A program made the position numbers and the translations under genes. Under the pieces are notes generated by a model. That model worked only from the letters and a program-made list of their open reading frames with translations, did no database searches and was not told the DNA's origin. A DNA stretch of 63,987 nt, counting the filler, from Octopus bimaculoides (lineage: Eukaryota), in NCBI RefSeq assembly GCF_001194135.2. It is 6 parts of 6 records of this genome, joined end to end, with 100 filler letters (N's around TTAATTAATTAA, not from the genome) between each part and the next. Parts side by side here need not be neighbours in the genome. Positions count along the whole stretch, not along the records: positions 1 to 27,990 come from NC_068994.1; 5 more parts are not named here. The stretch is one strand, 5' to 3'. Shown in pieces: positions 9,121 to 9,652 of this stretch. Positions within the stretch are counted from its first letter, which is position 1. The number at the start of each line of letters is the position of its first letter.

Positions 9121-9652
9121 TTATCCCCACTTAAGCATGGACACTCTGTTAGAACAAGCTATACTGCAATAGATACTATGAGAGATACTCTCACATTGGC
9201 TTTTGGTGCCAAATGCACTCTTGTTTATATCACCAGCCTGGAGATAAATCCCTGCCACCTCTAGCACCAAAACCACCAGATCACTTGATTTCGACCTTCC
9301 TTGGTCTCATCAGTGATGGATGCTTGACTGCTAAAGATAGCAGCAACTCACATCCCTGCCAATGATAGTGCCAGAACAGGCACCAGTGTTGTGATTAGCC
9401 AGTGAACTTGTTAAAAAATATATATATTAGTGACAGAAGCAGTTTTAATACTGAGAGGTAATATTTATCCCCACTTAAACGTGGATGATCTGTTAAAACA
9501 ATCTATACTGCAGTAGAGACCGTGAGAGAAATTCTCATACTGGCTTTTTGGTGGAAAATGCACTCTTGTTTATATTGCTAACAGGGAGATAAATCCCTGC
9601 CACAACCAGCACCGAGACCACCAAATCATGTGATTTTGACCTTCCTTGGTCT
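9121..9652 (-). mobile_element. Retrozyme-like tandem unit, ~345-nt period, about 1.5 copies, each junction carrying a hammerhead
   Basis: 9121-9306 and 9465-9651 are diverged direct repeats offset by 344-345 nt; the second copy keeps stem II (GACC-AAGGAA-GGTC) and TGGTGG but lacks CTGATGA and has AAAA for GAAA. Confidence 0.65.
9273..9319 (-). ncRNA. Type I hammerhead ribozyme, structurally complete, in a DCTN1 intron (sense to the gene)
   Basis: Minus strand reads CCATCA-CTGATGA-GACC-AAGGAA-GGTC-GAAA-TC-AAGT-GA-TC^-TGGTGG: full core, G10.1-C11.1, 4-bp stem II, 6-bp stem I (one G-U), short stem III, AUC cleavage triplet. Confidence 0.85.

What the first reader, a model, noticed from the sequence alone, without database searches (positions are those of the whole stretch)
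9121..9652. Retrozyme-like ~345-nt tandem unit that could release a small circular RNA
Seen: 9121-9306 and 9465-9651 are diverged direct repeats offset by 344-345 nt. The hammerhead sits at the same position in each (intact at 9273-9319; a decayed half at about 9618-9651). Cleavage at both equivalent sites would free 9623-9279, 345 nt. The stem III segments TCAAGTGA and TCACATGA are each one change from the palindrome TCACGTGA, suggesting an ancestral dimer-cleaving motif. Established: animal non-LTR retrozymes are tandem monomers of a few hundred nt, each with a type I hammerhead, yielding circRNAs (reported in axolotl, coral and mussel) and thought to be mobilised by Penelope-like elements. 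Inference: this is an old copy of an octopus retrozyme family. With the upstream ribozyme decayed, this locus would cut once and not release a monomer.
Basis: partly seen in the sequence, partly recalled or inferred. Interest (0 to 1): 0.85.

Follow-up and report, generated by a model that had tools for sequence, protein, structure and literature searches.

The report
Octopus hammerhead-ribozyme repeat, old intronic copy
This is an old, one-and-a-half-unit copy of an abundant, non-coding ~345-nt octopus repeat that carries a self-cleaving hammerhead ribozyme, a mollusc "retrozyme"-type mobile element sitting inside an intron of the dynactin-1 gene; it adds an undescribed family to a known class, not a new kind of element.

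Summary
9121-9307 and 9465-9652 are direct repeats offset by 344/345 nt, 82% identical. A complete type I hammerhead lies at 9319-9273, on the MINUS strand. No comparable motif turned up in 20 Mb of simulated sequence.

The upstream "decayed half" is mainly a 5' truncation. Homology stops at 9652, inside the ribozyme, and there is also a CpG-type G12->A change.

The unit is not a local duplication. About 204 kb of Octopus DNA fetched for an unrelated reason held relatives at four clear loci. One is another partial tandem with the same GGGGATAA|ATATTACC junction and the 145-nt "spacer". Two diverged subfamilies keep all three hammerhead helices through compensatory changes. No reverse transcriptase or endonuclease lies beside any copy.

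3' ends cluster, 5' ends vary, and flanks are AT-rich or microsatellite.

Best reading: a roughly 25-30 My-old insertion of a non-autonomous, hammerhead-bearing retroelement of the metazoan non-LTR retrozyme type. It lies in sense orientation in an intron of dynactin subunit 1.

Circular RNA, self-cleavage and mobilisation by Penelope-like elements remain inferred. This is a new member of a known kind, of moderate interest.

The parts
9121..9652 (-). Whole insertion: 1.54 tandem units (532 nt) of the ~344/345-nt hammerhead-bearing repeat. Sense strand is minus; the 5' end is at 9652 and the 3' end at 9121 (...GGGGATAA).
   Evidence: nhmmer 9463-9120 E=1e-120; 9659-9448 E=2e-73
9465..9652 (-). 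Upstream, 5'-truncated unit (copy 2): begins inside the hammerhead, just 3' of where the CUGAUGA box would be, and ends at GGGGATAA.
9618..9652 (-). Half hammerhead of copy 2: helix II (GACC/GGUC), AAAA instead of GAAA (G12->A at a CpG), helix III UCACAUGA, site U-U|U at 9624|9623, and the 3' strand of helix I. CUGAUGA and the 5' strand of helix I are absent.
   Evidence: 52.2 bits to family model, 5' half unmatched
9320..9464 (-). 'Spacer' segment of the full unit (ATATTACCTCT...(TA)n...GCAGTCAAGCAT). It is a conserved part of the family monomer, not locus-specific filler.
   Evidence: 75-80% identical in L004 and L008; present in L006
9258..9326 (-). Intact type I hammerhead ribozyme with extended helix I (core 9319-9273); predicted cleavage between 9279 and 9278.
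   Evidence: (87.1 bits)
9121..9272 (-). Body of the downstream full unit (copy 1), from just 3' of the hammerhead to the conserved 3' terminus CCATGYTTAAGTGGGGATAA.
9279..9623 (-). The 345-nt monomer bounded by the two equivalent cleavage sites. Folded as a circle: MFE -99.7 kcal/mol, z = -4.0 against dinucleotide shuffles, 56% of bases paired.
11863..11994 (-). Context: exon (44 codons) of dynactin subunit 1, with AG|...|GT splice sites.
   Evidence: (Pfam Dynactin, 26.4 bits)
11649..11732 (-). Context: next dynactin-1 exon (28 codons, PGEEKSEFSILLRDLETCNNDTRMCAKK). The repeat starts 1,997 nt downstream of its donor site, on the same strand.
   Evidence: (the two exons joined align to DCTN1 residues 730-802, E=4e-13)

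Best explanation
WHAT IT IS. 9121-9652 is an old, 5'-truncated insertion of 1.54 units of an abundant, non-coding, non-autonomous Octopus retroelement family. Its ~344-nt monomer carries one canonical metazoan type I hammerhead ribozyme. In other words, it is a member of the non-LTR retrozyme class, and it lies in sense orientation in an intron of the dynactin subunit 1 gene.

SHOWN:
- The repeat and the intact ribozyme motif.
- The family is dispersed.
- Partial tandems share one junction.
- The three helices show covariation.
- No coding capacity and no neighbouring RT/EN.
- 3' ends cluster and 5' ends vary.

INFERRED from the published class:
- Master copies are tandem multimers transcribed into oligomeric RNA.
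- The hammerheads have a short, near-palindromic helix III, so they work best when two copies pair.
- They cut out monomers with 5'-OH and 2',3'-cyclic phosphate ends.
- A host RtcB-type tRNA ligase circularises the monomers.
- A Penelope-like element's reverse transcriptase/endonuclease copies the circle or multimer by target-primed reverse transcription at AT-rich sites.
- Reverse transcription starts near ...GGGGATAA and runs more than once around, leaving greater-than-unit, 5'-truncated tandem copies like this one.

AT THIS LOCUS. The element is most likely a dead copy. Only one catalytic core survives. If the dynactin-1 pre-mRNA is transcribed through it, that core could cut the intron at 9279|9278, probably slowly because the monomeric helix III is only 3 bp.
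For: - Repeat and hammerhead.
- Organism is Octopus.
- Dispersed family: nhmmer hits at L004 (E=1.5e-112 and 3.6e-38), L008 (1.4e-36 and 2.7e-22), L006 (8e-16) and L007 (1e-13) in 204 kb. A broader profile adds a weak hit in L003.
- L004 is itself a ~1.4-unit tandem. The junction GGGGATAA|ATATTACCTCT is identical in the window and twice in L004. The tandem junction is therefore a family property, not a local duplication.
- The spacer is conserved in L004, L006 and L008.
- Hammerhead structure is conserved across subfamilies only 55-66% identical overall. 93% of cells pair against 21-43% when partners are slid. Five pairs changed on both sides, a count reached in 3 of 500 shuffles. Examples: helix I U-G->G-C and C-G->U-A, helix II C-G->U-A, helix III U-A->C-G.
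- In L006 the hammerhead is 77% identical to the window copy, against 57-60% for the rest of the unit.
- No Pfam domain in six frames of 8640-11640. No GIY-YIG or PLE-type RT motif in any fetched locus.
- GC is 41% and the monomer is 345 nt, which fits the class description (under 45-50% GC, 150-450 bp; mussel 350-390 bp; PMC7229834).
- 3' ends of the window, L006 and L007 copies fall within about 12 nt of GGGGATAA, while 5' ends differ. Flanks are AT-rich or microsatellite. This matches PLE target preference and internal initiation (PMC8557442, PMC11167929).
- The circular monomer is more stable than shuffles, z = -4.0.
- Helix III hairpin is about 0 kcal/mol, against -9.0 (copy 1 x copy 2) and -14.3 (ancestral palindrome) as intermolecular duplexes.
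Against: - No locus in my small sample has two complete, intact hammerheads or more than 1.6 units.
- No target-site duplication was found in the window.
- No RNA evidence of any kind is available: no expression, no circles.
- No octopus Penelope-like element could be retrieved, so the pLTR relationship is untested.
- The nearest-neighbour MFE of the isolated ribozyme region is an alternative fold (-18.7 against -13.3 kcal/mol for the hammerhead fold).
- The monomer circle is only 56% paired, not rod-like.
- The copy-number estimate (order 10^4) rests on 4-5 hits in gene-proximal DNA. Two of those hits lie next to the SINE used as bait.
- The covariation alignment was fitted to the model and has only 6 rows.
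Confidence: 0.75

Rival explanations
1. It is a fragment of the pseudo-LTR or UTR of an autonomous Penelope-like element (PLE). PLE partial-tandem insertions naturally leave duplicated hammerhead-bearing ends. On this view it is not a separate non-autonomous retrozyme family.
For: PLEs carry hammerheads in their pLTRs, insert as partial tandems and inverted 5'-truncated copies, and prefer (TA)n or AT-rich targets (PMC4209133, PMC8557442, PMC11167929). L008 shows a head-to-head inverted arrangement of two partial units. Xenopus retrozymes are sequence relatives of pLTRs (bioRxiv 10.64898/2026.07.22.740005). Penelope-type PLEs are annotated in O. vulgaris (PMC13282606).
Against: The repeat period is 344-345 nt with a conserved junction at two loci, which leaves no room for a ~2.5-kb ORF between copies. 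No RT or GIY-YIG remnant lies next to any of the five loci. The ribozyme has the canonical metazoan type I architecture (helix I 6 bp, helix II 4 bp, a short near-palindromic helix III). It does not match the PLE 'min-HHR' (helix II 6-8 bp, helix I 4-5 bp, no helix III) described in PMC4209133.
Confidence: 0.1
2. It is a SINE-like, RNA polymerase III-transcribed retroposon that happens to carry a hammerhead, like Schistosoma Sm-alpha. It would be mobilised by a LINE, and the tandem arrangement would be secondary.
For: Unit size (~345 nt) and dispersal at high copy number resemble Sm-alpha (from my own knowledge of Ferbeyre et al. 1998). The window and the fetched loci are saturated with SINEs, and a LINE-type RT fragment lies 2.2 kb from the L008 copy.
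Against: The consensus has no B box, and the only A-box-like string has 2 mismatches. There is no A-rich or simple-repeat 3' tail at the 3' ends. Greater-than-unit copies with an identical internal junction at two loci are not what LINE-mediated SINE insertion produces.
Confidence: 0.05
3. The intact hammerhead is an exapted intronic ribozyme that regulates dynactin-1 pre-mRNA, analogous to the conserved intronic HH9/HH10 hammerheads of amniotes. The repeat would be merely its evolutionary source.
For: The ribozyme is in sense orientation, about 2 kb into an intron of an essential gene. Its best Rfam match is HH9. It is the only one of five family copies examined whose core is intact.
Against: At about 10% divergence from the consensus, roughly a quarter of copies would keep the ~13 essential core positions unmutated by chance (0.9^13), so an intact core needs no selection. 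The surrounding unit has diverged like the other copies, 80-82% pairwise. The HH9 score is far below threshold. No orthologous locus could be examined.
Confidence: 0.03
4. It is a simple local segmental duplication that contains a chance hammerhead-like string.
For: There are only 1.54 copies at this locus, TRF reports nothing, and the Rfam score is sub-threshold.
Against: Related copies occur at four or more other loci on different chromosomes of another species, with the same junction. The hammerhead helices covary. The descriptor gives zero hits in 20 Mb of simulated sequence.
Confidence: 0.01

Closest known systems
Metazoan non-LTR retrozymes (Cervera & de la Pena 2020, NAR, PMC7229834), especially those of the mussel Mytilus galloprovincialis
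   Same: Non-coding tandem monomers of a few hundred nt (mussel 350-390 bp; here 344-345). Low GC (41%). One type I hammerhead per monomer. High copy number and dispersal. No LTR, PBS or PPT. Found in a mollusc that also has PLEs.
   Different: Only partial tandems (1.4-1.5 units) and sub-monomer fragments were seen in my sample. No RNA data. The sequence is unrelated to any published retrozyme I could check. Cephalopods are not mentioned in that paper or its supplement. Helix III is of the short, palindromic, dimer-favouring kind that the paper associates with amphibian rather than invertebrate retrozymes.
Newt/axolotl satellite-2 hammerheads (dimer-dependent type I hammerheads; Forster et al. 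1988, as cited in PMC4209133 and PMC7229834)
   Same: Short helix III capped by a (near-)palindromic loop. The single motif is marginally stable, whereas two copies can form an extended helix III: -14.3 kcal/mol for the inferred ancestral AUCACGUGAU.
   Different: Different phylum and different sequence. Here the palindrome is broken by one substitution in each window copy.
Hammerheads in pseudo-LTRs of Penelope-like elements (Cervera & de la Pena 2014, PMC4209133; Craig et al. 2021, PMC8557442; Frangieh et al. 2024, PMC11167929)
   Same: Partial-tandem and inverted insertion structures. AT-rich or microsatellite targets. A preferred internal 3' start of reverse transcription. These elements are the likely source of the enzymes that move the family.
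   Different: No RT/GIY-YIG ORF within or beside any copy. The ribozyme is canonical (helix II 4 bp, helix III present), not the minimal PLE variant.
Schistosoma Sm-alpha / Sj-alpha hammerhead-bearing SINE-like repeats (from my own knowledge)
   Same: A dispersed and tandem invertebrate repeat of about 335 nt with an active-type type I hammerhead.
   Different: No pol III B box was found here.
Rfam Hammerhead_HH9 (RF02275), the intronic hammerhead of amniotes
   Same: Best Rfam hit. Type I topology with a 4-bp helix II, a 6-nt loop 2 and a 3-bp helix III. Intronic and in sense orientation.
   Different: 29.1 bits against a gathering score of 52. HH9 is a single-copy conserved locus, whereas this is a repeat-family member.

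Membership tests
Hammerhead ribozyme, type I | Conserved core C3-U4-G5-A6-N7-G8-A9, G12-A13-A14, the A15.1:U16.1 pair, H17 not G | tested here: met
   Minus strand 9319-9273: CUGAUGA, GAA, A...U, C17.
Hammerhead ribozyme, type I | Three helices around the core, with helix I open (5'/3' ends) and helices II and III closed by loops | tested here: met
   Helix I is 6 bp plus a 5-bp extension, helix II 4 bp with a 6-nt loop, helix III 3 bp with a 4-nt loop. Supported by compensatory changes in L006 and L007.
Hammerhead ribozyme, type I | Reaches Rfam's curated score for a hammerhead family | tested here: not met
   Best is HH9 at 29.1 bits against a gathering score of 52. The Rfam models are built from other lineages, whereas the descriptor test and family covariation are positive.
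Hammerhead ribozyme, type I | Self-cleavage activity | not testable with these tools
   Needs in vitro transcription of monomer and dimer constructs.
Metazoan non-LTR retrozyme | Tandem repeats of 150-450 bp monomers (dimers to multimers), each with a type I hammerhead | tested here: inconclusive
   The 344/345-nt period is seen as 1.54 units here and about 1.4 units in L004, with an identical junction. No array with two or more complete hammerheads occurs in the 232 kb examined.
Metazoan non-LTR retrozyme | Dispersed multi-copy family in the genome | tested here: met
   Four clear loci plus one weak locus in 204 kb of O. vulgaris, besides the window.
Metazoan non-LTR retrozyme | Non-coding, with no LTR/PBS/PPT and low GC (under 45-50%) | tested here: met
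   No Pfam domain in six frames. All frames carry stop codons. GC is 0.41.
Metazoan non-LTR retrozyme | Target-site duplications (when present, longer than 4 bp) | tested here: not met
   No shared string of 6 nt or more in the 40-nt flanks of the window copy. The class description says 'when present', and this copy is old, so the feature is weakly diagnostic.
Metazoan non-LTR retrozyme | Expressed as monomer-length linear and circular RNAs | not testable with these tools
   No octopus transcriptome can be searched by nucleotide sequence here.
Metazoan non-LTR retrozyme | Highly self-paired monomer RNA | tested here: inconclusive
   Circular MFE is -99.7 kcal/mol with z = -4.0 against shuffles. 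Only 2% of GC-matched genomic windows are as stable. However, only 56% of bases are paired.
Penelope-like element (autonomous) | ORF with RT and GIY-YIG endonuclease between hammerhead-bearing pLTRs | tested here: not met
   no such ORF or motif in the window neighbourhood or in any fetched locus.
Penelope-like element (autonomous) | Minimal hammerhead variant (long helix II, short helix I, no helix III) | tested here: not met
   Helix II is 4 bp, helix I is 6 bp and helix III is present, against the description in PMC4209133.
SINE (pol III retroposon) | Internal A and B boxes and a LINE-type 3' tail | tested here: not met
   No B box within 2 mismatches, one A-box-like string with 2 mismatches, and no tail at the 3' ends.

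The most novel reading that the evidence does not exclude
The locus may not be dead. The single intact catalytic core (copy 1) can also pair with the upstream half-site (copy 2), which keeps helix III's 3' strand, a cleavable U-U|U site and helix I's 3' strand. This forms a hybrid hammerhead that nearest-neighbour energies rate as more stable than the cis fold: -20.1 against -13.0 kcal/mol, with an 8-of-9-bp helix III. One ribozyme could then cut both sites in turn. That would release the 345-nt RNA (9623..9279) from the dynactin-1 intron for circularisation. The result would be a host-gene-driven, one-and-a-half-ribozyme circular-RNA source, and more generally a way for 5'-truncated retrozyme copies to stay productive.
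Probability: 0.08. Interest if true: 0.55.

Novelty: new member of a known kind. Interest (0 to 1): 0.4.

Why it matters
It adds cephalopods to the animals that carry hammerhead-bearing, retrozyme-type repeats. In the literature I could search, these are reported for cnidarians, a mussel, amphibians, other vertebrates and some other invertebrates, but not for octopus.

It also suggests, on a small sample, that the family is one of the more abundant octopus repeats (order 10^4 copies). Such a family would probably be filed among the many 'unclassified SINE' or 'unknown' families in current octopus repeat libraries.

It supplies a consensus, a covariance model and three subfamily hammerheads. 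With these, the family, its active arrays and its circular RNAs could be found directly in octopus genomes and neural transcriptomes.

For this particular locus the practical consequence is small. It is an old copy in an intron.

Tried and rejected
- Rfam at gathering thresholds on the window and on all Octopus loci found no hammerhead. Only the permissive scan shows HH9.
- TRF found nothing, because there are fewer than 2 copies.
- Exact look-up of window ORFs returned nothing.
- A protein-database search with a pseudo-translation of the unit returned nothing. The dynactin exon also returned nothing.
- DNA pattern scans gave nothing in viral contigs, metagenome contigs (both scans used) or prokaryotic genome contigs.
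- A 16-mer gave 12 viral-contig matches. The family profile showed these to be chance.
- A target-site duplication search was negative.
- A search for Pol III boxes was negative.
- An internal sub-repeat in the monomer (9248-9273 against 9352-9377) is marginal, with 7 of 300 shuffles as good. I did not build on it.
- Two candidate downstream dynactin exons that I guessed from memory (about 2040-2120 and 430-520, minus strand) did not match DCTN1 and are dropped.
- A weak covariance-model hit at L007 5519-5581 lies in a SINE and is not a hammerhead.
- Long intronless ORFs near the fetched copies are C2H2 zinc-finger genes or have no Pfam domain, and none is a PLE.
- The apparent SINE-hammerhead association in L004 and L006 was examined. 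In L004 the SINE is inserted in the spacer. In L006 it merely lies about 100 nt upstream, across a microsatellite. I do not treat it as a composite element.
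Full report
OBSERVATION

The region was read directly and analysed for repeats. 9121-9307 and 9465-9652 are direct repeats, start-to-start 344/345 nt apart. They are 82% identical over 188 aligned positions with one 1-nt indel. No other copy exists in the 27,990-nt piece.

The hammerhead is on the minus strand. The reverse complement of 9319..9273 reads CCAUCA CUGAUGA GACC AAGGAA GGUC GAA AUC AAGU GAU C|UGGUGG. 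Every conserved core position is present, and helix I is extendable by AGCAU/GUGCU across a UUUUG bulge.

Rfam does not report the motif at curated thresholds. In a permissive scan of 801 nt the best hit is Hammerhead_HH9 at 29.1 bits, E=4.3e-5, against a gathering score of 52. A strict structural descriptor (helix I at least 5 bp, helix II at least 4 bp, helix III at least 3 bp, exact core) finds exactly this site in the piece. It finds none in 20 Mb of first-order Markov sequence with the window's composition, even when relaxed. The motif is therefore not a chance string.

WHAT THE 'DECAYED HALF' IS

On the sense (minus) strand the insertion begins at 9652. Homology to copy 1 stops exactly there, just 3' of where the CUGAUGA box would be. 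Copy 2 therefore never had the 5' half of the ribozyme at this locus. This is a 5' truncation, the usual signature of target-primed reverse transcription. It also has AAAA in place of GAAA (G12->A).

That G lies in a CpG (UCGAAA). The same change has occurred independently in the O. vulgaris copy L004, so it looks like a recurrent methyl-CpG decay route to ribozyme inactivation.

CONTEXT

The piece is a draft eukaryotic scaffold with six N gaps and 36% GC.

Stop-free segments revealed two exons on the minus strand with clean splice sites, at 11994-11863 and 11732-11649. Joined, they align to dynactin subunit 1 residues 730-802 of 1278 (E=4e-13).

The repeat starts 1,997 nt downstream of the second exon's donor, on the same strand. 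About 470 codons of the gene must still follow, so the repeat is almost certainly intronic and in sense orientation. I could not confirm a downstream exon inside the piece.

No Pfam domain occurs in any frame of 8640-11640.

ORGANISM AND RELATED SEQUENCES

Direct routes to relatives failed.

As a calibration I searched a profile of pseudo-ORFs from the window's abundant SINE. It hit only 'hypothetical' proteins of Octopus vulgaris and O. bimaculoides, plus unnamed Logan contigs. One window SINE copy is 99% identical to a copy in O. bimaculoides. The source is therefore an Octopus, probably O. bimaculoides or a close relative.

Fetching the DNA around nine of those proteins gave 204 kb of Octopus sequence chosen without regard to the finding. 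BLAST and a profile HMM of the unit found relatives there:
- L004 (O. vulgaris OX597822.1, beside a DIS3/Rrp44 gene).
- L006.
- L007.
- L008.
- A weak fragment in L003.

THE FAMILY

L004 is itself a partial tandem. Its parts, in order, are:
- A 5'-truncated unit (9787-9883).
- The junction GGGGATAA|ATATTACCTCT.
- The spacer, interrupted by an antisense SINE.
- A degenerate hammerhead (UUGACAA ... AAAA ... ACGUGAUC|UGGUGG).
- A full body.
- GGGGATAA|ATATTACCTCT again.
- 40 nt of spacer ending in (TA)n.

The same junction thus occurs in the window and twice in L004. The 145-nt 'spacer' is 75-80% identical in L004 and L008 and is recognisable in L006. The tandem arrangement and the spacer are therefore properties of the family, not of this locus.

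L008 holds two partial units head-to-head with no ribozyme. That arrangement is described for Penelope-like elements (PMC8557442).

L006 and L007 belong to diverged subfamilies, 55-66% identical to the others.

The 3' ends of the window, L006 and L007 copies fall within about 12 nt of GGGGATAA. The 5' ends all differ. Flanks are AT-rich or microsatellite.

No RT or GIY-YIG sequence is near any copy.

Four to five loci in 204 kb extrapolates to the order of 10^4 copies per genome. The sample is small and gene-proximal, and two hits lie next to the bait SINE, so this figure is only an order of magnitude.

THE RIBOZYME ACROSS THE FAMILY

A covariance model built from the five hammerhead regions scores as follows:
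- Window copy 1: 87 bits.
- L006: 79 bits.
- L004: 75 bits.
- L007: 69 bits.
- The truncated copy 2: 52 bits.

On the model-fitted alignment, 93% of cells form standard pairs, against 21-43% when partners are slid by 1-3 columns. Five of 18 pairs show changes on both sides, a count reached in 3 of 500 shuffles. By eye:
- L007 has helix I CCAGUA/UACUGG, against CCAUCA/UGGUGG in the window.
- L007 has helix III ACC/GGU, against AUC/GAU.
- L006 has helix II GAUC/GAUC, against GACC/GGUC.

The caveats are six rows and an alignment fitted to the structure.

In L006 the ribozyme is clearly better conserved than the rest of the unit, 77% against 57-60%.

Each genomic copy other than window copy 1 has at least one core mutation: L004 has several, L006 has A9U, and L007 has A6G. 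These are dead copies of masters that had working ribozymes.

An intact core at about 10% divergence is expected by chance in roughly a quarter of copies (0.9^13). The window's intact ribozyme therefore needs no special explanation.

FOLDING

The helix III hairpin has no predicted stability. Intermolecular pairing of the helix III segments gives -5.8 kcal/mol (copy 1 with itself), -9.0 (copy 1 with copy 2) and -14.3 (the inferred ancestral palindrome AUCACGUGAU). The ACGU core survives in L004.

This is the dimer-favouring architecture described for most metazoan type I hammerheads (PMC4209133) and for amphibian retrozymes (PMC7229834).

The canonical cis fold (-13.3 kcal/mol) is not the nearest-neighbour MFE (-18.7).

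Folded as a circle, the 345-nt monomer is more stable than dinucleotide shuffles (z = -4.0) and than 98% of GC-matched genomic windows. Only 56% of its bases are paired.

AGE

Window copies 1 and 2 are no closer to each other (82%) than to copies at other loci in another species (80-86%). L004's two units are 93% identical.

This star-like pattern fits copies that were near-consensus at insertion and have each drifted by about 9-10%. On the calibration used for O. vulgaris repeats (JC 0.09 is about 25 My and 0.2 is about 56 My; PMC13282606), that is roughly 25-30 My, around or before the O. vulgaris/O. bimaculoides split quoted there. This is a rough inference.

INTERPRETATION

The locus meets the structural definition of metazoan non-LTR retrozymes (PMC7229834) on every point I could test except three:
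- Arrays with two or more full ribozymes. None was found in my sample.
- Target-site duplications. None was found, and they are optional in the class description.
- RNA evidence, which is untestable here.

It differs from PLE pLTR hammerheads in ribozyme architecture and in lacking any ORF. It lacks SINE hallmarks.

The mechanism I commit to is the published retrozyme cycle: multimeric transcript, hammerhead cleavage, RtcB-type ligation to a circle, then PLE-mediated target-primed reverse transcription running more than once around the template. Here it is supported by three features: the conserved tandem junction, the clustered 3' ends with variable 5' ends, and the AT-rich targets. None of its RNA or enzymatic steps has been shown for octopus.

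A recent preprint reports that about 43% of Xenopus retrozyme copies are intronic and that monomeric derivatives are scattered evenly (bioRxiv 10.64898/2026.07.22.740005). An intronic partial copy is therefore ordinary.

THE LESS ORDINARY READING

The upstream half-site retains everything a hammerhead substrate strand needs. Paired with copy 1's core it forms a canonical hybrid hammerhead with an 8-of-9-bp helix III. That hybrid scores -20.1 kcal/mol, against -13.0 for the cis fold.

One core could therefore, in principle, cut both sites and release the 345-nt RNA from the dynactin-1 intron. I give this a low probability. The calculation ignores long-range closure and competing folds, and there is no RNA evidence.

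VERDICT

The family appears to be undescribed for cephalopods in the literature available to me. It is a new member of a known kind.

Noticed in passing
window 11863-11994 and 11649-11732 (minus strand): Two consecutive exons of dynactin subunit 1 (residues ~730-802 of the 1278-aa mammalian protein) with canonical splice sites, separated by a 130-nt intron. The 44-residue first exon shares no three 5-residue words with any protein in the 5.8-billion-protein database, even though that database holds Octopus proteomes.
   Followed up: partly
window 6021-6320 (minus strand): Mariner/Mos1-type transposase remnant: Pfam HTH_48, 32.2 bits.
   Followed up: partly
window 28-292, 852-1133, 3012-3195, 3451-3663, 11296-11608, 14005-14311, 19009-19466, 21949-22408, 23177-23413, 26460-26770: About ten copies of one abundant Octopus SINE, recognisable by the pseudo-peptide LDALPNANHSESVVGAF. 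It has internal ~63-nt sub-repeats and an (ATG)n tail. O. vulgaris gene models annotate its ORFs as 'hypothetical predicted proteins'.
   Followed up: partly
window 7085-7282, 14570-14806, 15941-16150, 17540-17746, 23900-24058: A second dispersed repeat family (pseudo-peptide LRPCWSTAFSR.NRPQ.LFF), often next to (TA)n/(CA)n microsatellites. Not identified.
   Followed up: no
L008 3660-3931 (O. vulgaris OX597833.1): Two partial units of the hammerhead repeat joined head-to-head: antisense body, then sense spacer. Both arms stop close to the ribozyme, which neither includes. This resembles the inverted 5'-truncated copies described for Penelope-like elements. A LINE-type RT fragment (..MLFADDAAL..) lies 2.2 kb away at 863-1450.
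   Followed up: partly
L004 9917-10262; L006 10014-10414: In two O. vulgaris loci a SINE copy lies antisense, just 5' of the hammerhead. In L004 it is inside the spacer near the (TA)n tract. In L006 it is about 100 nt upstream across a microsatellite. This may reflect a shared preference of both elements for (TA)n sites, or it may be coincidence.
   Followed up: partly
window 9640-9643 region (copy 2, UCAAAA) and L004 10414-10420: The catalytic G12 of the hammerhead sits in a CpG (UCGAAA). It has mutated to A independently in two copies. The helix III palindrome ACGU also contains a CpG and is broken in both window copies. CpG decay seems to be a built-in inactivation route for this ribozyme.
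   Followed up: partly
window 9248-9273 vs 9352-9377 (and 9593-9618): A ~35-nt segment just 3' of the hammerhead (CUGGUGGUUUUGGUGCUAGAGGUGGCAGGGAU) resembles a segment of the spacer (CUGGUGCCUGUUCUGGCACUAUCAUUGGCAGGGAU). This may be a trace of an older internal duplication of the monomer. The significance is marginal, with 7 of 300 shuffles as good.
   Followed up: partly
L003 7027-7103: A mir-9/mir-79 precursor in O. vulgaris, above Rfam's gathering score on both strands.
   Followed up: no
L005 8118-9785 and 15090-17225: Two intronless C2H2 zinc-finger genes with 17-23 fingers each, typical of the octopus ZNF expansion. The 842-aa ORF at L003 10813-13341 has no Pfam domain.
   Followed up: no
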